NCBI GenBank assembly: GCA_002269645.1 | Contig: NIVC01000056.1 | Coordinates: 806,001 to 870,000, forward strand | Direction: 5' to 3' | Source of the DNA: Macrostomum lignano | Taxonomy: Eukaryota | DNA length: 64,000 bases | Shown: in pieces, positions 14,200 to 42,123 of the stretch | Layout: each line of letters opens with the position of its first letter | Position numbering within the stretch: the stretch's first letter is position 1 | The notes under the pieces: model-generated | What the model saw: only the letters and a program-made list of their open reading frames with translations | Databases searched by the model: none | Told to the model about the DNA's origin: nothing | Translations under genes and position numbers: made by a program

Positions 14200-17100
14200 T
14201 CAGGGAGGTCTGCCGGTCCTGTCTGCAGCGTTGTCTTCGGTGGGGAAGATGGAGGCTCGTTTGGTAGCCCGGAGGAACCGGATGAGCCGTGGGATGTTCT
14301 CGGGCCGGCAAACGTCGTCCAGGGACGGGTTGGGCCCGAGGTGGTTGAACCGGTCTCGGTTGAAGGCCGGGCAGTAGCAGACGAAGTGCTTGGCATCTTC
14401 GTTCTCGAGGCTGCAGAAGGGGCAGAGTTCACTCCGGCAAACACTTCGGAGGAAACAGTGCCTGGCAAAGCAACCGTGACCTGTGAAGGTCATAGTGAGA
14501 GCGCGGATATCTTTTCGATTTTGATTCAAAAGGATTCTCCGCAGCTTGAGGGATGGATTGGGCACTGTAGCACGGGACTGGCGGCAGTTGGAAATGCCAC
14601 CCCATCTGCTTAAGTGCAGGATGTCCGCCCAGTCATTAATCTCACGATTAATGACCGTGGCGGGGATGGGGGCCAGGGGCACGGGGCCAAGGAGCGAGCC
14701 AGAACTACCCGCCTTGGCGAGAGAGTCGGCGGGCTCGTTACCTTTGAACCCAGCGTGTCCTGGGATCCACGTGAGCCGGACGGTGTTCCTCCGAGCCAGC
14801 TTGTTGAGCTGCCCGATACAGTTGCGGACTGTTTGGGAGTTCGTAGTGGTGTGACACAGGGCCTGCAAAGCGGCTTGGCTGTCAGAGTGGAAGAAGAATC
14901 TTCTGTCCTTGAAGTCCCTGCAGTGGAGCTCAGCTGCACAGGAGCTGATGGCAAGGATTTCGTTCTGGAAGACGCTAGAGAGTCTGCCAGTGTGTTGGGC
15001 GTGAGTAGCGATCACGCCGCCGTTGATAAGGATACAGACTCCAAAGCCGGATAAACCGTCTTTGGAGGATCCGTCAGTGAAGCAGTGAACCTCCTGAGGG
15101 GCCCAGCTGTCGTTGGCGTTCTCCCTGGAGGGGATAGTGACCTTGAAGCGTTGGTAGAGACTGAGGGAGCGCGGCTCAGCGTCCGAAAGGACAGCCGTAC
15201 TCCCGCTCTCCTCCAGAACTTTAAGGCACAGGCCAGAGTGCGGCAATAGCTTGCGCTTCGCCATCGCTCTTTGTGGCTTGAAGCTAACGCCAGCCTCGAT
15301 TAGCCGGCGGGTGGTTTTAGCAGCCTCGCGACGGACAAAGATGTCCAGAGGCGGGAAACAGAGAAAAGCGTTGAGGCCGTCAAAGGGAGCAGAGAGCGGG
15401 GCATTCAGAATCATGCGGCACGCGCGTCCCTGCACCTTTTTAAGGGCTTCGTAGCAGGTTTTAATCTGCAAGGCGCTGGTACAGATCATGCAGACCGGCG
15501 TAGGTATCGGCCGGTCGGACCATTGCGATGTAGATCCACCTGAGCCGTTTCGGGGTGAGGCCCCAGGTGGTGCCAACGGCTCTGTGCAGCTGCGCAAGAA
15601 TCGCGAGGGCTTTTTTGGTTTTGGCCTGAACGTGGGTGGACCACCTCAGCCGGTGGTCCAGCGTAACGCCGAGACACTTGGTTTGCTTGCAGGATGGGAT
15701 TTCCACCCCGTAAAGCTTTAGTGGGCGAATACGCCAGTTGACCCTGCTGGTGAACATGATCGCGACAGTTTTGGTCTCGGAGAGTCTGAGGCCGCACCTG
15801 TCCGCCCATCGTTCAGCAGAGCGAATAAAGTTTTGCAGAAGATCCCTAAGGGTTTCAGGTGACGGTCCGGATGCTACGGCTGTAACATCATCGGCGTAAC
15901 CGACCTTAAGGATGGGGTCAAGATGGCTGTCCTGAAGAAGCTCATCGATGACCATGTTCCAGAGAACTGGAGAAAGGACACCGCCCTGGGGGCTGCCTTT
16001 GCAGACGGTTACCGTCCGTTGGTGGCCCAGCAGGTGTGCGGTGGCAGTGCGGTGGCTGATCATATACATGATCCACCGGGTGAGGTGCGAGTGGGTTCAT
16101 CTAGCACGTAGAGCTCTGTCAAAAGCCTCAAAGAGGACATTATCAAAGGCTCCAACAATGTCGAGGAAGACAGCGAGAGCGTAGCCATTACCAAGAACGG
16201 CTTTCTCCAGCATGTCGACCAAGACATGAAGCGCGCTCTCCGTGGACCGGCCTGCCCGAAAGGCGTGCTGTTTCTCACTGAGCGGCTTGTTCTTCAGTTC
16301 CACAAAGAGGAGGCGCCAGAGCACCAGTCTCTAACAGCTTCACCAGTGAGGAGGTGAGGCTGATTGGTCTGAAGGATTTAATGGACCGATAGTCCGGTCG
16401 GCCGGGCTTGGGGATAAAAACCACCTTGGCCTCGGTCCAGGATTTCGGAACAAAGCCGAGTACAATGCAAGCTTTCAAGAGCTGGCAAAGGTACCGCAGA
16501 AAACCGGTGAATTTCACCGCCTCTCGCAGGAAAGCTGGCACAACGCCGTCCGGTCCTGGGGATTTGAATGGTATGAAGGAGGAGACTGCTTTAGTAACGC
16601 GGTCCTCCGTAATGATTGAGTCAGCCAGTCAGCCAGTACGTGTCCACCCACTGAATGATCAGGGGGGTTAGGCCTGGCTGGCTCGCACGGGAAAAACGCT
16701 GTTAGCATCGCCTCCAGCGTTTCTCCTGGGTTCTCAGTGAGCGAGCCGTCGGCTCTCTTTACTGAGGAGAGTTTGGACATTTTGTCCAGAGTGAGGGCTT
16801 TAACGATTCTGGAGGTGGGGCGGGAGCCCTCAAGTTCCTCACAGTATTCGCGCCACTTATTGGTTTTGGCATTCCTAACCTGCCTCTTGAACTCGTGGAT
16901 AGAGTTCAGGTAGGCGGTTTGGTCGGCCGGATTTTTAGTTTTTTGGGCCCTACGGTGAAGCCTTTTGGCTCTGCGACGGAGGTCGCCAAGCTGTGGGTTC
17001 CACCATGGGGCCGACTGTTTGCCTTTATATGCCTTTAGTGGGCATGAGGCTTCGAAGGCAGCAGTGAGCGAGTCCGTAAGTACGGCCGCAAATTCATCTG

Positions 17101-17814
17101 CTTCCTCGCAAGTGTTGATGGAGACTGGAGTGCTAGTGCATCGATAGGTCTCCTCCAAGGCAAGCCTGAAGGCGGTCCAATCGATATTCCTAGCATTCCG
17201 TTTCCAGTAAAGCTGGCCTGCGTTTTGGGCGCTGGCCAGCGTGAAAGAGATGAACTTGTGATCGGAGAGGGACGCCTCAGGAAGCACCCGCCACTCCCTA
17301 GTGCTCTGGAAGAGCCTGGGCGTGGCGAGGGTGGCATCCAGCACCTCCGATCGGCGTCCGTTATTGAAATTAGGGGTATTACCCGAGTTACAGAACTCAA
17401 TAGTTGTAGTAGTGATATAAGCCAGGAAGTCTTCACCTCTCTGGTTAATATCAGAACTGCCCCAGTGGATGTGGTGGGCGTTGATATCGCCTGCCACAAG
17501 CAGCTCATAATTCCTGGTGGAGCAGAGCTCGACCAGTGTGACAAGCTCTCCTGGGATCATCTCGCCGTTGCCCGGTAGGTAGACCGAGGCGATGAGGGTA
17601 GTCCTCCCAGGGAGTATGTCTTCAGACTGGATGACACAGATGTCCCTGGTAGACATGTGGGGACATGGTGGAGGCTGCCCCTTAGCGTCCAAGGTTCCTG
17701 GATAAGGATAATCCCTGGTGCGTATTGGTCAGTGTGTTTCAATAGGTTGACTGAAGCAGCAATGCTGTGCTGCAGGTTGACCTGCAAGCAGTGGATGCCC
17801 TGGGAGACAGTCAT
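14200..17814 (-). pseudogene. LINE ORF2 (APE, RT, RNase H, CCHC) with several frameshifts
   Basis: APE: QVNLQH, IQEPW, SVYLP, GDINAHH. RT: FIPKPG..YRSIKSFRPISLTS, QHAFRAGRST, LDIVGAFDN, PQGGVLSPVLWN, GYADD. RNase H: FTDGS, NEILAI, SDSQAAL, WIPGHAG..GNE.AD. C-terminal CPFC...HFVCYC. Confidence 0.9.
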
Positions 17815-21692: not shown

Positions 21693-22261
21693 ATGAAAAC
21701 ACAATTGGATTTCAGAAAATGCAGGACACCGAACATTATTTTGGCAGTGCTGCTCCTGCAAGTTGACTCATCCCAGCAGCAGGCCGTGTGCCCTGCTCCG
21801 TTCAACATCGAGGCTGGCAAGTGCGTCTTCGTGAACACTTCGATCGTATTCAACTGGTGCGAGGCCAACCGGCAGTGCGCAGCGATCGGAGGTGAGCTCA
21901 TCAACTCGAACGAGACGCTGAAACTGCTCAGCAGCATGCCGAGCATGAATGTCTTTACGCATTTGTGGCTCGGAGTGACCGACCTCGCGGACGAGCGACT
22001 GACATCTCGGTCGGGCTGGCAGACGGTCAACGGCAATGAAAATCTACCGCTAGACAACGCACTGTGGTACGGATGGATGCCAAACAACAACGGGAATCAG
22101 GACTGTGTGATGCTGGCAAATGACAACAGCCACACCTTTGTTGATCAATCCTGCATTCTTAAAAAAAGGGGATTCGCTTGCGAATTCACCCCAAAAATGG
22201 GGCCTTCATGCGCTACCTGGGTACAGGTGCCGTTCAAGCGCACTGAGTACAATGACGAGTA
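21693..22261 (+). CDS. Secreted C-type lectin domain protein, 5' part (interrupted by EnSpm)
   Basis: Hydrophobic leader IILAVLLLQV, then a CTLD: C..F....GKC, WCEANRQCAAIGGEL, WLGVTD, W....PNN.GNQDCV, VDQSC....FACE. Confidence 0.85.
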
Positions 22262-22777
22262 CACTGTAAATCTTATGGGTCCGGATAAGGTCCGAATTGC
22301 ATAATGCGGACCTTCATGCCTGAAGGCGGACCTTCATGTCTGAAGGTCCGATTTTTTTGGTCAGAGAAAACGAATGAAATTTTTTCAAGTGCCCTCAAAT
22401 GATATTTTTTTAAGCACACGCGAGATTTTATAGAGAAAATCGGACTGGAAATAAATTTAGGTTTTATACCACCGTATTTTTTGCCGCATAAAAACACAAA
22501 TAAAATTATCCGTCAAATGTAATTGCACAATCGAAAGCTCTAAATGCCTTAAATTAAAGGAATTATATATTGTATTCCTTTTAACAGGTACAAGCGCATT
22601 TCTAACACAGATCAAAAATATGTTGGGAACTTTTGTTTCACTCTACTAACTTCGAACATTTAGATTGTTGCGTGCAATTCGTTCTGATCAAACCTAAAAA
22701 TTAGTGCTTTTTAAACGTTTTTACGCGTTGTCCATTCCACAACGACGAATTTAGTAGGCTTATCCACTGTCCAGGAT

Positions 22778-25331
22778 ATGTTAAATGGAGATGAAAATGT
22801 AATTTCAAAACTATTTCAATGTAGTATATGTCTTCATACACACAAGGATTTATTTAAGCTTATAAGTCATATAAAACTATACCATTCTTTTGGGAATAGC
22901 AATTTTTTATGTCCAGTTAGGGGATGTTACCATATTAGTGTTACAATTGAAGGATTACAAGCACATGCCTATCGTATGCACAAAAACAGTGTTGTTGATA
23001 ATTTTTCCCAAGACCAAGTTCTACAGCCAAATTGTGTTCATAATAACCCTACTCTAGACTTATTAGGAAACCCTTTAGAAAATGAATTGCAAGCTGTGCC
23101 TATAGATATAGCCATATTATCTACTATTTGTAACCAAGTTGAAAATGAAAAAAAGACCCTGAATTTGAAATGTCTAGTGATTTTTTATGTGAAAATACAA
23201 GAAAACATCTTGCTGAAAATTTTGTTTACTTTTATCTAAAGTCTAGACATTTCTTTTTAATTCCTAAAAGCAAATCTAATCAATTATGTGAACTTGTTAA
23301 GGAAATAGTATTGAAGTTTGCTGATGACTATTTTTTGTTATTTGAGCAATTTTTAAAAGAAGAATGTCCTTCAATAGTTAACAGCTATAATTCTTATAAA
23401 AATAAATTAAATTTGCAAGAAATGATTGACCTTTCATTAGAGCATCTATTAAGTAATAAAAAAATATTTGAAATTTTACAAAACAAGTTTAATTTTGTTG
23501 AGCCCATTGAAATCATAGATGAAGAATCAAAATTAAAAATTCTATATATTCCAATAAAAGAAACACTTAGTTCTATTATAAAAAATGAGACATTGCTTAA
23601 GTATATTATTACAAATTCTTATTTAAATGCAACCAACAAAGAAAATTTTTTTTCAAGTCTACTTATTTTGAAGAACATATTAGTCCATTGTTAACAAATA
23701 AGAATGGTATATTCATAAAACTTTATTCAGATGAAATTGAAATATGTAATCCTATTGGGTCTGCCAAAACAAAACATAAATTATGTGTAGTATACTTTAC
23801 TATTCTTAATTTCCCTGAATATCTTAGTTCATCTTCAGACTTATATTTTCTTTTAACAGTATTTAATGATTCAAATGTTAAAAAGAAAGGTTTACAGTTT
23901 TGTTTATTTCCATTAATTAGAGAGCTGAATGAGCTTTACTTTGAAGAATTTCAAATAAGTAATTTGATAAAAATGCCTGTTATTGCTGCTTTCATGACTG
24001 GGGATAATTTATCAATACATAGAATGTTAGGTATGCAAACTTGGTTTTCAAGTGGTTATATTTGTAGATTTTGTTTTATAGGTTATAAACAGCTTTGTAG
24101 CATTAGATTAGAAGAATTAAGTACATTATTCCTATTTGAATATCGAGATAATTCATCATATATTGAAGATTTTAAATCCTTAAGTAATGGTTTAATTTCA
24201 CCATCTGTGTTTAGAAGTGTAGCATATATTAACTTTCAATATTTTTTCCCCCCTGATATAATGCATGATGTGTTTGAAGGGTTTTCTCATGTTGTTATAT
24301 GTATTATTCTATTAAGTATTATTCAAAATCATAATATTAGTATAGACTATATAAACAAACAACTAAATTTGATTAAAGAAGTCAGTATTCCTACAATAAA
24401 TAAATATCACTTACAAAATTATCATCTACCATGTACTTCTAATCAAATAATTGTTATTCTACAATACTTTGGACTTTTATTTGGACATTTGTTTGAGTTG
24501 GATGATGATATTTGGATATTATTTAATTGTCACAGGCAGTTTCTTGACATAATTTTGTCCCCATATGATAGTAGCATAAACTTAGAATATTTTCAATCTC
24601 TTATTTCTGGCCAATTAGAATTAATATATAGAAACACGGGCTTCAATCCTAAATATAAATGTAAATTGCATTATATATGTCACTATCCTGAATTTTATCA
24701 TTATTATAGTGGTCTTAAATACTTATGGTGTATGCGAGGTGAAGCTCATCATCAATTGCTTAAGAATATAAACAGGCATGCAAGAAATTTCAAAAATCCT
24801 GCCTATACATGTGCAAAACAATATCAAATTCAAAAGGCACTTATCATTAAGCACTATGAACCAGGTACAATTAAGAGCCATAATATAAATCCTATTAGCT
24901 TAAATATGCTATTGACAATAGATGAACAAACTGAGTTATGCAACAACATGAATTTAGATACAGACTCAATTATTGGCACTATTTGTCTTTCTACTAATGA
25001 ACTAAAATATCAGGGGTTTGTATATCGGACTCCAACATTAAATTACCGTTATTGTTTGCCAATTTTAGAACCAACTGGAATTGCTTTAGCATTAATTAGC
25101 CATATTATTCAACTTTCCAACAAGTGGATAATTATTTGTAAAAAAGTGAATGCTAAATTTTCTTGTCATTATAGCAGTTTTATATGCACTGTGAATAATG
25201 ACCATTTAGTATTTATTGAACCTACTCAGCACTTTTTTCATCAGCCAATTCCATTTTTAATGTATCAAGGGAAACTTTTTCTTTCTTTAAAATATTATCC
25301 AATGCTACATTGCCAAAACATTGATCAATAA
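22778..25331 (+). CDS. EnSpm transposase with two N-terminal C2H2 fingers (about 851 aa after two 1-nt corrections)
   Basis: CSIC..HIKLYH and CPVRGC..HAYRMH. Then LYSDEIEICNPIG..KHK..YF.ILN.P, GDNL, CRFC, PPDIMHDVFEG, KLHYICHYP and LWCMRGEAHHQ, which match animal EnSpm transposase motifs. Confidence 0.88.
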
Positions 25332-25636
25332 TCTACAATCTTAGTGGGTATCATTTTAGATAAATTTAAGCATATAACAATATGGCATACACTTGCACTT
25401 CATAAAATAACAAATTATTACAAGGGCCACCTTGCCTCTAGCACAAGGAACTGTGCTCTCCACCTTACATAGATTTCTGGCCTATAGGTGTCTAACCTTT
25501 TTATGATAGGTCGGCTTGCCCTTCCTTGACTAGGCTAGTTCTATGTAGATGGTGCATGTTTTCGAACCATTTCTTGCCTAAAATGGGTTCATCCTCTGTC
25601 TAAGCTTGTTGAAGCTTCAGCTTTTAGTATTGAAGA

Positions 25637-26178
25637 GTGAAGATTGTTCAGAAAAAAGCAACAAAAAAACAAAAACATCATAAAAACACTAAACATTTTG
25701 TTGTCACAGTCATTACTTATGGCTGCAAGGTATGGGGTCCACTGGCCAGGCAATCAAAAATTAAGGATCTGGATAATATTCAATTGAAATTCTATAAGTC
25801 TCTCCTTAAATTCTTAATCTACCAGAGCATACATACAAGCAATAAAGTCATACTCAATGAACTCAACATTCTTCCTATTTCTGAAATCATTAAGAAAAGG
25901 TACCTCCTTTTCTGGTTAAAACTTATTTAAAGCTAACTCTACTACCACTAGTCTCTTTAACAACAATGACAATCCAATTGATCCTTGGAAGAAAGCCATC
26001 TCACAGCAACTTAAAGGCATTGATCTAATGCAAAAACTTCTACTGTTTAAATTGTATTGTCCATTATTGACAACTTTTGTTAACACTAAGTTATTCATAT
26101 CTAATTAAATACACTCTATTAACATAACGGGCACTACTTGCCCAAGCCAATTAACTACTACTACTACTACTACTACTA
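25637..26178 (+). mobile_element. 3' fragment of an L2/CR1-group-like LINE with a (TAC)n tail, inside the EnSpm
   Basis: ITYGCKVWG...LDNIQLKFYKSLL...ILNELNILPI...RYLLFWLKL is a typical LINE ORF2 C-terminus. It is followed by (TAC)n at about 26153-26178. Confidence 0.6.
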
Positions 26179-26310
26179 CATTAAGTCAAGCCAAGGACAA
26201 AAGCCGAAAAATCATAATGAACAAGAATTCCTTGGCTTTATAAATTCATTTTATCTGTGTCTTACCAGATGTATTCTGATTGAGGTTGTGCACATCATAC
26301 CTCATTTCAG

Positions 26311-28029
26311 CTTCGAATCTGCAACGGCTCAGAGGAGCGCAAGAAGCTCCTTCCAGCTTCTGGCCTGACCTTGGCGGACCTTCGCATCAAAGGTTGTTTA
26401 AAATTGGACATTGCAGATGTTGAAAATGTTCGCATTGTCACTTCTGACGGTTTCGAAATCGACGACGATGATTTAATATCGGAGGTGGCAAAGGAATGTA
26501 GAACTGTGTACTTCCTTCTTTCTGGAGAGTTGCTTCCAAGCTGCGGTGCATGCCCTGTAGAACCTTCAACTACACCAAAGCAGCAAAGCGAAATACGCAA
26601 TGTCGAGATTGCCACAACACCGAGTCGAGGCACACAGGCTCTGAGTCCAAATCCAGCTGTAGCAGCTACGGCTGCAACTACACTTCCATGGCCCGAAGTG
26701 TACTCGCTTCCACGAATGGACGATCTCGCCAACGCCCTTCGTGATCTACGAATGCACCCCGAAAAGGGTTCCGATTTAAAAATGAACGCGACGTTTGTCA
26801 ACAAGTTCCTTAAATTCATCGTCGATCACATCTGTTTGAACTATCTGTCGCCAAATGAACCATACCTGTCATCTAGCCAGATAACAGATGTGTGCACTTC
26901 CATAGTAACTTCGTATCCTGGACTGAAGGACACCTCATTAAGTGGGAGCTCAAGCTTTTGGCGCCAAAAGCTTATTCGGCGTTTCAAAGAGCTCCGGTTC
27001 GTTGGCGACTTTGTCGACAAGAGCAGCCCAACGGTTCAGGAGATGCGACGGAAGCATGGTCGACTTGGTCATCGGCGTATAATTCTACCAAATGCTGCTG
27101 CAGCTGCTGCAGGCCCAAGTGCGGTTACTGTGAGCCAAAGGCATAAACGGCAGTACAAGGAAGTTGAAGGCCAGGAAGATGATGACGACAATGAAATTAT
27201 AGCTTCACGTGCTAAAAGAGCCAACAAGCAGCGTATCAACGACGACGAAGATCTGATCGAAGAAGAAGGCGATGATGATAGTGATGCAGACGATGCTGGC
27301 AGTGCAATGGCGAAGAGCGTTGACTTCGGCGAGTTCGATACCGATGTACCACCGTCACACGAAGCTCGTCGAACGAGATTGAACGAGACTCATCATGACT
27401 CTTCAATATCAGACGTTCTCAACGAAATGCAGGCTCTGTTTCCGATTCGAATATTGCGGTGCCAAGATTTGACGGTTAGTGACGAAATTGCCTTATATGC
27501 GCCACTGGTAAACATCGCAGTACTGCAGCAGGAGGCGTATCTCATGATCCAGACATACAACAGAAGCAAAACTGACTATGTACTTCCACCAAGTCCATCG
27601 GAAATGAGAATCAGGATTATTAACGCCTTGTTGCTTGTGTACAGTAAAAGGCAGTTGCTAAAAAATTTCAAGCTGTGCAAGGATTATGTGGAATTGCCAG
27701 TTGTTTCAGAGGAGGACAAGCTGCCTGTGGCTGTCTTTCTTCTTCTCGGTCGGTTGCGAGTCGACCCGTCTATTATTCTTCGCGACGCACTGCCAGTCAG
27801 AATTCTGACAGAGGATGGAAAATGGTGCGGCGTTTTCGTCAACGGTGCGAGCATCCCATTCGACAGTGTTACTGACTCGATAATTGCATTTGTAATTGTC
27901 TTCATCGCGTTCAACCTCCAGCACCTCCCTGCCCTAGAGGCGTTTCTGGAGGTAATCGAAGTGCTGTCGGGCCTTCGCAAGAAAGCCGTCCGCAAGGCTG
28001 CAGTAGCTATTTTGGATGCACTTCGTTAG
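26311..28029 (+). CDS. EnSpm accessory ORF: CIDE-N-like N-terminus, acidic middle region, conserved C-terminus
   Basis: 572 open codons from the putative acceptor ATTTCAG|26311. The C-terminal IIAFVIVFIAFNLQH...FLEVIE resembles the accessory ORFs of animal EnSpm elements (often auto-annotated SAMD3-like). Confidence 0.75.
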   Translation, partial: LRICNGSEERKKLLPASGLTLADLRIKGCLKLDIADVENVRIVTSDGFEIDDDDLISEVAKECRTVYFLLSGELLPSCGACPVEPSTTPKQQSEIRNVEIATTPSRGTQALSPNPAVAATAATTLPWPEVYSLPRMDDLANALRDLRMHPEKGSDLKMNATFVNKFLKFIVDHICLNYLSPNEPYLSSSQITDVCTSIVTSYPGLKDTSLSGSSSFWRQKLIRRFKELRFVGDFVDKSSPTVQEMRRKHGRLGHRRIILPNAAAAAAGPSAVTVSQRHKRQYKEVEGQEDDDDNEIIASRAKRANKQRINDDEDLIEEEGDDDSDADDAGSAMAKSVDFGEFDTDVPPSHEARRTRLNETHHDSSISDVLNEMQALFPIRILRCQDLTVSDEIALYAPLVNIAVLQQEAYLMIQTYNRSKTDYVLPPSPSEMRIRIINALLLVYSKRQLLKNFKLCKDYVELPVVSEEDKLPVAVFLLLGRLRVDPSIILRDALPVRILTEDGKWCGVFVNGASIPFDSVTDSIIAFVIVFIAFNLQHLPALEAFLEVIEVLSGLRKKAVRKAAVAILDALR

Positions 28030-28659
28030 ATGATTTTATAACGCCTAGACATGACTATTGTAATCATTTTCATTTTTATAATAATTATATTCATTTTCAT
28101 GTTAGTACGATTGAATATGACTGTGAATTAATCGTAATCACAAGCCTAATCACAATCACAATATTTATTTTCATATTCACAATCATAATCATAGAGTGTT
28201 ATCTGTCATCAGAGGGTCACGGCGATGTTGGCTGCTTATTTATTGCCCTGTGTATTTAGTTTGTGCTTTTTAGTCTGTATATTCAACTTCACTCTTTGAG
28301 TGACCAAAGCAAACACTTATTCGCAATGTGTAATGTGCAACAAATAATTACTAAATATTATTATTACCACTGTTTTTGTACTACAACAATAAATATTTTA
28401 GGATCAATCTTTATATACCATAAAAAATACTTTAAATTGGTTAACATCCTTCATAAACATGCAATTGTTGATTACGAATGCTTCACTTCTTACTTTTCTT
28501 AAATTGAGCAATGACTGACAACATTGTATGCCTCACATAATGTAATTGGGAACAATTTTACAGGTAAGGAAATTCATAAAATTCATACCTATAATAGTGG
28601 GTATTTTGTGTCTTGCAGATCAAGTGAATACATTTTGGGGTGTAATCGTTTTTATATTT

Positions 28660-28870
28660 CGGACCCATAATGCGGACATCTGAAAAATATGGACTTTGCA
28701 ATAGGGACCTTTCAAAATACGGACCTTTCAAAATACGGACCTTGCAATACGGACTTTACAATACGGACCCATCAAAATACGGACCTTTCATGGTCCGTTA
28801 TTTCGACGCTCCGGACCCTCCACAATGGACCTTTCCCGGACCCTTCTTCGGACCTTTAGGAATTACAGTG
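28660..28870. repeat. Subterminal repeat array (AATACGGACC-like) at the EnSpm right end
   Basis: More than 10 CGGACC/GGACC motifs, mirrored by GGTCCG/CGGACC at 22275-22350. Confidence 0.85.
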
Positions 28871-29059
28871 TACTGCTACACTGAGATGCAGCAAGTTACC
28901 GATGTGCTTCACTGCTTCGCCTCAAGCAAGTACTCGAATGCCAGGAGCGTGTTGTACAATAAAAATCTTCGCAAGTGCCGGTTGCTGCAGTTTATTGACG
29001 CCCAAGTCGAACAGGAAATCGAGAACAGCAGCGACTGGATAAAGTTCGTTCTTCAGTAA
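28871..29059 (+). CDS. C-type lectin gene, 3' part (PAN/apple-like domain)
   Basis: YCYTEMQQVTDVLHCFASSKYSNARSVLYNKNLRKCRLLQ...* is in frame with 21693 once the element and one TA are removed. Confidence 0.8.
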   Translation, partial: YCYTEMQQVTDVLHCFASSKYSNARSVLYNKNLRKCRLLQFIDAQVEQEIENSSDWIKFVLQ

Positions 29060-34493: not shown

Positions 34494-35432
34494 TTAGGCA
34501 GCAAAGATAGACAGCCTGTCAGCCTTCTGAACATCCGTTCTCCAGTGACCAGTCGAGCTATTCGTGAACAAAATCCTCGGCGCGGCAGTGAAGTTTCCCT
34601 TAGAAAATGGGCAAACATCATCGGTATCCATTATCATTAGCAGTCCATTGTCAGCAGAGCAACCGCCGTAGTCGTAGTTGATGAAAAACCTGCGCTCGTG
34701 ACTCCATCCAGAAGCGGTAGACACGTGACCAGCTACGGAGAAATAGTTGACAGTCCTGTTAGCGAGGCCATCTACCGGCCAGCTCGATTTGAGGCAATCG
34801 AGGGCAAACCAATTCTGCGCCGTGAGTCCCGGCTTGGATACGTCAAACGTCAATCGAATAACGGGAACGTTTGATTTGTACACGATTACGCGAAACTCTT
34901 TCATGGTTAGAAAGTTTTTCAGTTCGTTCAAATTGTCCAGAAGATCCGAGCGGAACACATCCGGCTGTCCAGCAGTTGAGCTCTCGCTCTCAACCGTTAG
35001 GACGTGCTCATTGCCAGCTGCTGTGACGAAAGAGTTGTAGGCCTTGCGGTTAACTCCAGCTTTGATGGTGAAGATCAAGTGAGACACTACCGGGGCATCT
35101 GGTGCCCGACACGGAAGCCAGGACTCTAGAAGTCCATCGGACGAAGATGGCAGGCACTTTAGCGGGCACTCGCTGCTCAGTAGGTGGCACTCGCCTGAGC
35201 TGCCGTTCAGAAGAACTTGACTGGCACGCCAAATCATTTTCGATTCGAACTCTTTTTGCAGTTTTGTTATCCAACAAATGTGTCTCGGTATGGCGGTCTT
35301 GCAAGCTAAGTTCTTCAAGCAATCAGCGCAACCGTTAAGCTTCTGAACTTCAAAGCATGACTCTGTTCGGGCCTGAGACCAAACAGAGTTTAAAAAAACA
35401 AATAACAGAAGTAGATTTGCTGCAGATAACAT
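34494..35432 (-). CDS. Intronless secreted Cys-rich protein, 312 aa, family unassigned
   Basis: ATG followed by signal peptide MLSAANLLLLFVFLNSVWSQ. Cys-rich N-terminal half. The C-terminal half contains NWF..D.LKSSW, YFSVAG, RRFFINYDYGGC..D.G and ADRLSIF. Confidence 0.8.
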   Translation of the reverse strand: MLSAANLLLLFVFLNSVWSQARTESCFEVQKLNGCADCLKNLACKTAIPRHICWITKLQKEFESKMIWRASQVLLNGSSGECHLLSSECPLKCLPSSSDGLLESWLPCRAPDAPVVSHLIFTIKAGVNRKAYNSFVTAAGNEHVLTVESESSTAGQPDVFRSDLLDNLNELKNFLTMKEFRVIVYKSNVPVIRLTFDVSKPGLTAQNWFALDCLKSSWPVDGLANRTVNYFSVAGHVSTASGWSHERRFFINYDYGGCSADNGLLMIMDTDDVCPFSKGNFTAAPRILFTNSSTGHWRTDVQKADRLSIFAA

Positions 35433-41301: not shown

Positions 41302-42123
41302 ATGTCCTTCAGCGAGAAGATTGTTGTTGAGCTCTGCTACAACTTGCTGCACCAAGGCTACCGCATCTTTGTCGATAAATGGTTCGGTTTCTATCGGCTG
41401 TCAGAGTACCTGCTGACACAAGGAACGCACCTGACTTGTACCGTCCGGGCCGACCGAGGTGTGCCGATTGAGCTCAGACAGCTGCACGTTCCACCTAACG
41501 ACGTCGCCTTCATGCGCAAAGACGGGGTGCTGGCTGTCAAGATCGTTGAACGAAAGGAGAGTGGCCTGAAGACTCTGTATTTGCTGGACACGAAAGAGGC
41601 GGCTGAATGGGTTCAAACCAGACGCGTGGTTTGTGGAGGAGCAGAAACAGTTGTGCAGAAGAGCAGGTCAGTTCTCACCTACAATCGGTGCATGGGTGGT
41701 GTTGACAGAATGGACAGTCATCTACAGCCTCATCTGCCAGGGAGGAAAACTACAAAGTGGTTTTTGAAGCTCGGCTTGCATCTATTTCTTCAAATGATTC
41801 GCAACGCTTGGATTGTGTACAGCCGGTGCGGTGGAGAGAAGACGTTCGCCAAGTTTCTTGAGGCCAGCATTCGGGAGCTGGTGGAGCGTACCGGAACGAG
41901 CAGGAAGCGCCCGGCCGCTGCCATCCAGGCCGCTCCAGGTGGCCCAGTCAGTCCGCACTTTCCAACGAAGATCGTGGCGCGGGACAGTCAGCCAAGACCA
42001 ACAAAGCGCTGTCGTGTCTGCTACAGAGCTGGAAGCAGCAAGCCCACGATATACTGCTGCCCTGAGTGTCCAGGGGAACCGGGGCTCTGCTTGGAAGCCT
42101 GCTTTCAGCAGTTGCAAGCCTGA
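41302..42123 (+). pseudogene. piggyBac transposase, C-terminal half
   Basis: YRIFVDKWF, YNRCMGGVDRMD, KWFLKLGLHL and the Cys-rich tail CRVC...CCPEC....LC...CF. The N-terminal half is missing or decayed. Confidence 0.85.

What the first reader, a model, noticed from the sequence alone, without database searches (positions are those of the whole stretch)
21693..29059. A secreted C-type lectin gene is split by a CACTA/EnSpm element; exact removal restores the ORF
Seen: joining 21693-22261 to 28873-29059 gives ...KRTEYNDEY|CYTEMQQ..., a stop-free 251-aa protein (leader, CTLD, PAN/apple-like tail). Neither half has picked up a stop or frameshift, which suggests a recent insertion. The current allele stops 14 codons into the element (TAA at 22302-22304), predicting a secreted CTLD-only product. 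Knowledge: CACTA excision usually leaves footprints. Inference: this could be a polymorphic or somatically unstable lectin allele, with TE-driven variation in a putative recognition protein.
Basis: partly seen in the sequence, partly recalled or inferred. Interest (0 to 1): 0.8.

Follow-up and report, generated by a model that had tools for sequence, protein, structure and literature searches.

The report
Flatworm lectin gene split by transposon
A C-type lectin gene, almost certainly from the flatworm Macrostomum lignano, is cut in two by a very young 6.6-kb cut-and-paste DNA transposon; this is an ordinary event, but the element looks able to move still.

Summary
A lectin ORF (21693-22261) is interrupted by a 6,609-bp element (22262-28870). 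The element has CACTG...CAGTG termini and is flanked by a 2-bp duplication (TA). Removing the element and one TA gives a stop-free 251-aa ORF. A 50%-identical homologue from an ENA contig reads straight across the junction and carries the same 17 nt (GAGTACTGCTACACTGA).

The element is 99.6-99.7% identical to full copies in M. lignano assembly GCA_002269645.1, with only two substitutions in 6.6 kb. Four independent insertion sites there show 2-bp duplications (AT, TA, TG, CA). Its transposase has the DDE triad with C(2)C and H(3)H motifs, so it belongs to the Chapaev-Mirage-CACTA superfamily. It is the animal type with 2-bp duplications, not a classic CACTA/3-bp En/Spm element.

As assembled, the window copy's transposase has two 1-bp homopolymer deletions. 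Intact 851-aa copies exist elsewhere in the genome.

The "PAN/apple" tail is not supported. Polymorphism and somatic excision could not be tested. With a 2-bp duplication, the simplest excision footprint (+2 nt) would not restore the frame.

Verdict: a real, recent transposon insertion that truncates the gene. It is a new member of a known kind and of modest interest.

The parts
21693..22261 (+). 5' part of the lectin coding sequence: start codon, hydrophobic leader, C-type lectin domain (about residues 33-165) and the first 25 residues of the conserved tail. It ends with the left TA of the target-site duplication.
   Evidence: ORF listing and translation. Pfam Lectin_C E=3e-8 and 1.1e-8. PDB DC-SIGN CRD hits. 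Homology to P0001.
22260..22261 (.). Left copy of the 2-bp target-site duplication (TA)
   Evidence: Element boundary fixed by alignment to L002 and L003. All other copies have 2-bp duplications. Satellite empty sites in the L003/L006 flanks.
22262..28870 (+). Full-length CMC-superfamily (animal CACTA-like) DNA transposon, 6,609 bp, with genes in the same orientation as the lectin
   Evidence: 99.64% identical end to end to L002:5484-12076 and 99.71% to L003:906-7509, both from M. lignano GCA_002269645.1.
22262..22275 (+). 5' terminal inverted repeat CACTGTAAATCTTA
   Evidence: Identical in L002-L006.
22278..22350 (.). 5' subterminal repeats: five CGGACC/GGTCCG motifs in both orientations
   Evidence: Motif map. 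14 of the window's 28 motif copies lie in the two 100-220 bp termini, against a background of 0.22 per kb.
22302..22304 (+). Premature stop codon (TAA) of the interrupted lectin ORF, inside the element
22778..25331 (+). Transposase gene (851 aa in intact copies): N-terminal C2H2-like zinc finger plus a DDE catalytic domain. In the window copy it is broken into three frames by 1-bp deletions in an A-run (23147) and a T-run (23645).
   Evidence: Three-frame translation. 99% identity to M. lignano PAA60002.1 and the intact 851-aa PAA61829.1. Indel positions. Conserved D319, D410, C430/C433, H632/H636, E656.
26314..28029 (+). Second element gene (571-572 aa in other copies), with an N-terminal CIDE-N-like domain and an acidic middle region. 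Function unknown. By position and by analogy it is a candidate binder of the subterminal repeats.
   Evidence: ORF. Called as a 569-572 aa gene in L002, L004, L005 and L006, and as a shorter 396-aa product in L003. Pfam CIDE-N 23.5 bits, exactly at the cutoff. No PDB or NCBIfam match.
28660..28855 (.). 3' subterminal repeats: nine CGGACC/GGTCCG motifs, mostly direct, spaced 14-16 bp apart
   Evidence: One 16-bp unit is missing in L002.
28857..28870 (-). 3' terminal inverted repeat (CACTGTAATTCCTA on the minus strand)
   Evidence: Identical in L002-L006.
28871..28872 (.). Right copy of the 2-bp target-site duplication (TA)
28873..29059 (+). 3' part of the lectin coding sequence: last base of codon 190, 61 further codons of the conserved Cys-containing tail, and the stop codon

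Best explanation
**What it is.** This is a loss-of-function (truncating) allele of a secreted-type C-type-lectin-domain gene. It arose by a recent cut-and-paste insertion of a 6.6-kb DNA transposon of the Chapaev-Mirage-CACTA (CMC) superfamily into the coding exon, in a Macrostomum lignano-type genome.

**How it arose.**
- Shown: the transposase made a 2-bp staggered cut at a TA in codon 190 (GAG TA|C TGC) and inserted the element, leaving TA on both sides.
- Shown: the element has CACTG...CAGTG termini, clusters of CGGACC repeats under both ends, a DDE transposase gene and a second gene.

**Effect on the gene.**
- Shown from the sequence: the lectin reading frame now runs 13 codons into the element and stops.
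- Inferred: any product keeps the leader and the lectin domain but loses 61 residues of a conserved cysteine-containing tail.

**Can it still move?**
- Shown: the element belongs to a family whose copies are almost identical. Its ends are the same as those of the other copies, and intact 851-aa transposase genes exist elsewhere in the genome.
- Inferred: the copy can probably still be mobilised in trans, even though its own transposase gene is frameshifted as assembled.

**Would excision repair the gene?**
- Inferred: excision would restore the lectin only if it were precise or left a footprint that keeps the reading frame. Keeping both TA copies gives a +2 frameshift.
For: **Restored ORF and homologue**
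- Exact ORF restoration.
- The homologue is collinear across the junction (E=4e-61) and has an identical 17-nt junction sequence.

**Element ends and duplications**
- The TIRs are unique in the window.
- Alignment to other full-length copies fixes the element ends.
- Five independent insertions have 2-bp duplications: TA, AT, TA, TG, CA.
- Uninterrupted satellite units reading CAGCTACTGAC serve as paralogous empty sites for the L003/L006 copy.

**Superfamily**
- 4,502 transposase homologues at E<=0.001.
- Invariant D319, D410-N411, C430-x2-C433, H632-x3-H636 and E656 in 60 diverse homologues. This matches the CMC/CMCT signature described in PMC12730594.
- 14 of 60 homologues hit Pfam Transposase_21 (best 1e-6), 3 hit Plavaka and 3 hit DUF4218.
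- Animal CACTA elements with CAC..GTG termini and 2-bp duplications are on record (PMC6004678).

**Recency**
- The window copy differs from L002 and L003 by 2 substitutions and three 1-bp deletions. L002 and L003 show no substitutions between themselves.
- An intact 851-aa transposase exists. It is listed as UniRef100 n=3 in M. lignano.
Against: - No empty-site allele, homeologue or sequencing read from the same species could be retrieved. The insertion's frequency and present mobility are therefore unknown.
- The window copy's own transposase ORF is broken at two homopolymer runs. These may be real mutations or long-read assembly errors.
- The window copy's direct Pfam Transposase_21 score is below threshold (15 bits against 28.6).
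- The species assignment rests on the element alone. The host genes in the window have no match among annotated M. lignano proteins.
- No RNA data are available, so splicing of the element out of the transcript cannot be excluded.
Confidence: 0.88

Rival explanations
1. The element is tolerated because it behaves as an intron. Splice signals in or near its ends remove it from the mRNA, so the gene still makes a near-full-length lectin. dSpm and Ds insertions in maize exons behave this way.
For: - The termini contain splice-like signals: a donor ACT|GTAAAT at 22266 and an acceptor TTACAG| at 28868.
- The pairing 22266 with 28885 would be in frame, giving ...NDEYT|MQQVTD....
- The element lies in the sense orientation.
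Against: - The pairing that uses both termini (22266/28868) leaves +8 nt and shifts the frame.
- The only in-frame pairings delete the conserved CYTE, including invariant C191.
- The donors match the consensus at only 6 of 9 positions.
- A 6.6-kb intron holding two sense genes and AATAAA signals at 22450 and 22499 is likely to end transcripts early.
- No RNA evidence is available.
Confidence: 0.07
2. It is an old, fixed pseudogene. The insertion is ancient, the lectin has long been dead, and the clean halves are a coincidence.
For: The window is crowded with transposons: non-LTR retrotransposon pieces at 14200-17692 and a piggyBac-like fragment at 41302-42123. The window lectin has MPN where its homologue has the canonical EPN sugar-binding motif.
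Against: - Both halves are free of stops and frameshifts.
- The tail keeps 35 of 62 residues, including three cysteines, identical to a homologue that is 50% identical overall.
- The element differs from other copies by only about 0.03% substitutions, against roughly 2% between M. lignano subgenomes (PMC10733133).
Confidence: 0.03
3. It is an assembly artefact. A transposon copy was wrongly placed inside the lectin gene during long-read assembly of a repeat-rich polyploid genome.
For: The M. lignano assemblies are known to contain chimeric scaffolds and collapsed or expanded variants (PMC10733133). The three single-base deletions private to the window copy look like long-read errors.
Against: A misjoin would not produce a TA duplication placed exactly at the element's true termini, with the flanks rejoining into a perfect homologous ORF.
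Confidence: 0.02

Closest known systems
Animal CACTA/EnSpm-type elements of the CMC superfamily with 2-bp target-site duplications (for example ENS1_Cis of Ciona savignyi and CMC-NA MITEs, PMC6004678; the Mirage group, from my own knowledge of the Repbase classification)
   Same: [quoted passage not shown]
   Different: No reference sequences were available, so placement within CMC (Mirage or animal EnSpm) is not resolved. The second gene carries a CIDE-N-like domain, which I did not find reported for these elements.
Plant En/Spm (CACTA) elements and their insertion alleles in maize genes
   Same: - Short TIRs beginning CACT.
- Arrays of subterminal repeats in both orientations.
- Two element genes.
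- Insertion into an exon in the sense orientation, with splice-like signals in the termini.
- Weak relation to Pfam tnp2 (Transposase_21).
   Different: - Termini are CACTG, not CACTA.
- The duplication is 2 bp, not 3 bp.
- Both genes look like single exons rather than alternatively spliced transcripts of one unit.
- No similarity of ORF2 to TnpA was shown.
Chapaev elements (PMC4079192)
   Same: CMC superfamily, animal hosts, CAC...GTG termini.
   Different: Chapaev makes 3-4 bp duplications (TWA in Chapaev3). This family makes 2-bp duplications with no fixed sequence (TA, AT, TG, CA).
DC-SIGN/CD209-type and invertebrate secreted C-type lectin domains
   Same: The lectin domain fold signature is present: Pfam Lectin_C above threshold, best PDB matches to DC-SIGN CRDs and mosquito mosGCTL-1. 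The cysteine framework is long-form.
   Different: The sugar and Ca2+ motif positions read MPN and VDQ rather than EPN/QPD and WND, whereas the homologue L001 has EPN. An 86-aa conserved C-terminal tail has no known family.

Membership tests
CMC (Chapaev-Mirage-CACTA) transposon superfamily | [quoted passage not shown] | tested here: met
   In an alignment of 60 diverse homologues, D319, D410-N411, C433, H632, H636 and E656 are invariant, and C430 is conserved in at least 90%. The criterion is as stated in PMC12730594.
CMC (Chapaev-Mirage-CACTA) transposon superfamily | Termini 5'-CAC...GTG-3' | tested here: met
   CACTG...CAGTG in the window and in five other loci.
CMC (Chapaev-Mirage-CACTA) transposon superfamily | Short target-site duplication (2-4 bp; 2-5 bp for the wider CMCT clade) | tested here: met
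   2 bp at five independent sites: TA, AT, TA, TG, CA. Paralogous empty sites in a satellite array.
CMC (Chapaev-Mirage-CACTA) transposon superfamily | Profile match to the tnp2/CACTA transposase family (Pfam PF02992) | tested here: inconclusive
   Window protein scores 15.2 bits, E=0.012, below the 28.6-bit cutoff. The intact copy P0157 has no hit at E<=0.01. 14 of 60 homologues hit it, best 1e-6, and 3 hit Plavaka.
Classic En/Spm (CACTA sensu stricto) | Terminal pentanucleotide CACTA | tested here: not met
   Termini are CACTG.
Classic En/Spm (CACTA sensu stricto) | 3-bp target-site duplication | tested here: not met
   2 bp in every copy examined. Extending to 3 bp fails in L002 (GAT against ATG) and in the window (GTA against TAC).
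Classic En/Spm (CACTA sensu stricto) | Subterminal repeat arrays plus a second, TnpA-like protein that binds them | tested here: inconclusive
   Repeat arrays are present and a second ORF is present. No homology to TnpA was shown and binding was not tested.
Chapaev | 3-4 bp target-site duplication (PMC4079192) | tested here: not met
   2-bp duplications.
Mirage group of CMC | 2-bp duplication plus phylogenetic placement with Mirage transposases | not testable with these tools
   The duplication length fits. No Repbase reference proteins were available for a phylogeny.
Tc1/mariner | Obligate TA target duplication and a Tc1/mariner-type DDE/D transposase | tested here: not met
   The window's TA duplication is not obligate: other copies have AT, TG and CA. 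No Tc1/mariner Pfam family was hit.
C-type lectin-like domain (CTLD) proteins | Match to the Lectin_C profile above the curated threshold | tested here: met
   34.8 and 36.2 bits against a cutoff of 22.6. DC-SIGN CRD matches in the PDB.
C-type lectin-like domain (CTLD) proteins | Canonical Ca2+/sugar-binding motifs (EPN or QPD, and WND) | tested here: not met
   The window protein has MPN at 129-131 and VDQ before C154. The homologue L001 has EPN. It is therefore a CTLD member, but sugar binding cannot be assumed.
PAN/apple domain (claimed for the tail) | Match to a PAN/apple profile, or the PAN fold | tested here: not met
   Neither the window tail nor the homologue's tail has any Pfam hit at E<=10. 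No PDB sequence match covers the tail. The AF2 model has pLDDT 35.9 and cannot be interpreted.

The most novel reading that the evidence does not exclude
This element may belong to a currently active, autonomous CMC/CACTA-type transposon family in the model flatworm Macrostomum lignano. On that reading it carries a previously undescribed CIDE-N-domain accessory gene. The lectin insertion would be a young insertion found in only one subgenome or strain. It would be polymorphic, possibly excising in the soma or germline, and would generate presence/absence and footprint variation in a putative recognition protein.
Probability: 0.3. Interest if true: 0.5.

Novelty: new member of a known kind. Interest (0 to 1): 0.3.

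Why it matters
A transposon landing in a gene is routine in a repeat-rich genome. Its main practical use here is for annotation: gene finders will miss or truncate this lectin. The loss is probably buffered if the two other homeologous subgenomes reported for M. lignano carry intact copies.

The more useful by-product is the element itself. It is a complete 6.6-kb CMC-type transposon with a defined structure: 2-bp duplication, CACTG ends, CGGACC subterminal arrays, an 851-aa transposase and a CIDE-N-like second gene. Its copies are almost identical, which points to very recent or ongoing movement in a laboratory model that has transgenesis and stem-cell biology. If it is active, it could contribute to genome instability in this neopolyploid. 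It could also serve as an endogenous insertional mutagen.

Tried and rejected
**Searches for an empty-site allele or homeologue. All came back empty.**
- Exact look-ups of the 251-aa joined product, the 203-aa truncated product, the 129-aa chimeric ORF and ORF2.
- Look-up and homology search of the neighbouring 312-aa ORF, to reach homeologous contigs.
- A protein-pattern scan and an exact 30-nt empty-site scan of JGI metagenome contigs.

**Protein homology searches.** The searches on the transposase ORF and ORF2 timed out. The representative-library search replaced the transposase search. ORF2 was never searched for homologues.

**Other ideas I dropped**
- TSD length. From the window alone it was ambiguous, because GTAC flanks both ends and allows 2, 3 or 4 bp. 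Other copies settled it at 2 bp.
- Tc1/mariner, suggested by the TA duplication. Rejected because other copies have non-TA duplications and the transposase is of CMC type.
- A LINE reverse-transcriptase fragment nested at 25637-25930, suspected by eye. There is no significant similarity to LINE ORFs in the window or to Pfam, and the segment is present in all copies.
- Structure prediction of the joined lectin to test the PAN/apple idea. The model was unusable (pLDDT 35.9), so I ran no fold search.
- Paralogues of the lectin or further copies of the element in the window: none.
- A relative of the transposase in Tara metagenome contigs (L007-L009) shows no comparable second gene.


Full report
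**1.

- The ORF starting at 21693 runs to 22261. It continues 13 codons into foreign sequence and stops at TAA 22302-22304.
- Joining 21693-22261 to 28873-29059 gives 756 nt and a stop-free 251-aa protein...KRTEYNDEY|CYTEMQQ....
- The intervening DNA starts with CACTGTAAATCTTA and ends with the inverted CACTGTAATTCCTA. These are the only two matches in the 64-kb window, against 0.10 expected by chance.
- Repeats with a CGGACC/GGTCCG core lie under both ends. There are five in the first 100 bp and nine in the last 220 bp, against a background of 0.22 per kb.

**2. The joined reading frame is the ancestral gene, not a coincidence**

- The only database relative is P0001, on a 967-bp ENA metagenome contig (L001). 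It is 50% identical.
- It aligns in a single segment across the junction (query 70-248, E=4e-61).
- Its DNA reads GAGTACTGCTACACTGA at that point, identical to the predicted empty site.
- The 5' half is a C-type lectin domain: Pfam Lectin_C at 34.8-36.2 bits against a cutoff of 22.6, and PDB matches to DC-SIGN CRDs.
- The insertion does not fall between domains. It splits a conserved 86-aa tail, with 25 residues before the junction and 61 after. The lost part holds three cysteines that are invariant between the two proteins.
- The tail has no Pfam match at E<=10, and the AlphaFold model was unusable (pLDDT 35.9).
- The window protein has MPN where the homologue has the canonical EPN motif. Sugar binding cannot be assumed.

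**3. What the insert is**

- A search of 1.84 billion representative proteins with the 547-aa ORF (23688-25331) gave 4,502 hits at E<=0.001.
- The top hit is 99% identical. It belongs to a cluster of 11 hypothetical proteins, nine of them named Macrostomum lignano in the source records and all on NCBI contigs. The cluster includes an intact 851-aa form listed as n=3 in UniRef100.
- Five loci fetched from GCA_002269645.1 carry full-length copies. The window element aligns end to end (22262-28870) at 99.64% to L002 and 99.71% to L003.
- This fixes the boundaries at CACTG...CAGTG and resolves the duplication length. From the window alone, GTAC on both sides allowed 2, 3 or 4 bp.
- The target-site duplication is 2 bp: TA (window), AT (L002), TA (L003 and L006, which are the same site), TG (L004), CA (L005).
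- The L003/L006 copy sits in a 49-bp satellite. Its uninterrupted units read CAGCTACTGAC, which are natural empty sites confirming the TA duplication.

**4. Classification**

- In an alignment of 60 diverse homologues, the conserved positions are D319, D410-N411, C430-x2-C433, H497-D498, H632-x3-H636, E656, H659 and K663. All are invariant except C430, which is conserved in at least 90%.
- Pfam Transposase_21 (tnp2) is below threshold for the window protein. It is hit by 14 of the 60 homologues (best 1e-6), alongside Plavaka and DUF4218.
- CAC...GTG termini with a 2-bp duplication are documented for animal CACTA elements such as ENS1_Cis (PMC6004678). Chapaev makes 3-4 bp duplications (PMC4079192).
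The two classical hallmarks, CACTA ends and a 3-bp duplication, were tested and are not met.

**5. Anatomy of the element**

| Part | Window coordinates | Notes |
|---|---|---|
| 5' TIR and subterminal repeats | 22262-22350 | five CGGACC/GGTCCG motifs |
| Transposase gene | 22778-25331 | C2H2-like zinc finger plus DDE domain; 22-30% GC |
| Spacer | 25332-26313 | contains a (TAC)8 microsatellite |
| Second gene | 26314-28029 | 47-52% GC; N-terminus matches Pfam CIDE-N at exactly the gathering score (23.5 bits) |
| 3' subterminal repeats and TIR | 28660-28870 | nine CGGACC/GGTCCG motifs |

All these parts are shared by the other copies. Both genes lie in the same orientation as the lectin.

**6. 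Age and autonomy**

- Against L002 and L003, the window copy has five private differences. Three are 1-bp deletions (22527, 23147, 23645) and two are G-to-T substitutions (25557, 27611).
- L002 and L003 show no substitutions between themselves, only indels.
- That is about 0.03% substitution divergence, far below the roughly 2% reported between M. lignano subgenomes (PMC10733133). The family spread very recently, and the lectin insertion is probably younger than the polyploidisation (inference).
- The deletions at 23147 (A-run) and 23645 (T-run) break the transposase into three frames in the window. Both lie in homopolymers of at least 8 bases, so they could be assembly errors.
- Either way, the ends are the same as those of the other copies (apart from a 16-bp subterminal repeat unit that L002 lacks), and intact transposase genes exist. 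Mobilisation in trans is plausible (inference).

**7. Consequences**

- As assembled, the allele predicts the leader, the CTLD, 25 tail residues and 13 element-encoded residues (shown from the sequence).
- AATAAA signals at 22450 and 22499 could end transcripts early (inference).
- The termini carry splice-like signals (ACT|GTAAAT at 22266 and TTACAG| at 28868), but using both leaves +8 nt. The only in-frame pairings delete the conserved CYTE. I rate rescue by splicing as unlikely but untested.
- An excision that keeps both TA copies yields a +2 frameshift and a 246-aa aberrant product.

**8. What could not be done**

- I could not retrieve an empty-site allele or homeologue.
- Three protein searches timed out.
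- The host genes in the window have no annotated M. lignano counterpart in the protein collection. The species assignment therefore rests on the element alone.
- Polymorphism and somatic instability remain open.

**9. Verdict**

This is a real, recent, exon-disrupting insertion of a CMC-type DNA transposon with a 2-bp target-site duplication. It is an ordinary kind of event and a new member of a known kind. It is of modest interest, mainly because the family looks recently or currently active in a model flatworm and carries an undescribed CIDE-N-like second gene.

Noticed in passing
window 26284-28029 (+): The element's second gene begins with a CIDE-N-like domain (Pfam 23.5 bits, exactly at the cutoff). 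It has an acidic D/E-rich middle and no other Pfam, PDB or NCBIfam match. Its GC content (47-52%) contrasts sharply with the transposase gene (22-30%), which hints at a captured host sequence.
   Followed up: partly
window 22077-22085 (lectin residues 129-131); L001 433-441: The window lectin has MPN where its 50%-identical homologue has the canonical mannose-type EPN motif. The WND position is also non-canonical (VDQ).
   Followed up: no
window 28670-29059 (+): The last 200 bp of the element are open in the lectin's reading frame. This creates a 129-aa chimeric ORF with an ATG inside the subterminal repeats, fused to the lectin tail.
   Followed up: no
window 22527, 23147, 23645, 25557, 27611: These are five differences private to the window copy, compared with two GCA_002269645.1 copies that show no substitutions between each other. 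All three indels are single-base deletions, two of them in runs of at least 8 bases, so they may be long-read assembly errors.
   Followed up: partly
window 14200-17692 (-): Non-LTR retrotransposon pieces: endonuclease, reverse transcriptase and RNase H domains in successive ORFs.
   Followed up: no
window 41302-42123 (+): piggyBac-like transposase fragment (DDE_Tnp_1_7 plus a zinc finger). It covers only the C-terminal part of the profile.
   Followed up: no
window 34494-35432 (-): A 312-aa ORF with a signal-peptide-like N-terminus and many cysteines. It has no homologue at E<=0.001 among 5.8 billion proteins and no exact record.
   Followed up: partly
L003 406-905 and L006 5984-6483: One copy of the element sits inside a 49-bp tandem satellite (unit CCTACAGCTACTGACACAATTGACACGATCATACATTGCGAGCTAATAC). 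The same insertion, with identical flanks, appears on two different contigs of the assembly, which may be haplotigs or a duplicated assembly region.
   Followed up: partly
L001 100-260: The homologue's lectin frame extends upstream of the called start, through the conserved CPAPF...GGEL region. It meets a TGA at 110-112 with no in-frame ATG. The contig ends in AATAAA. This suggests a transcript-like or trans-spliced source, or a contig error.
   Followed up: no
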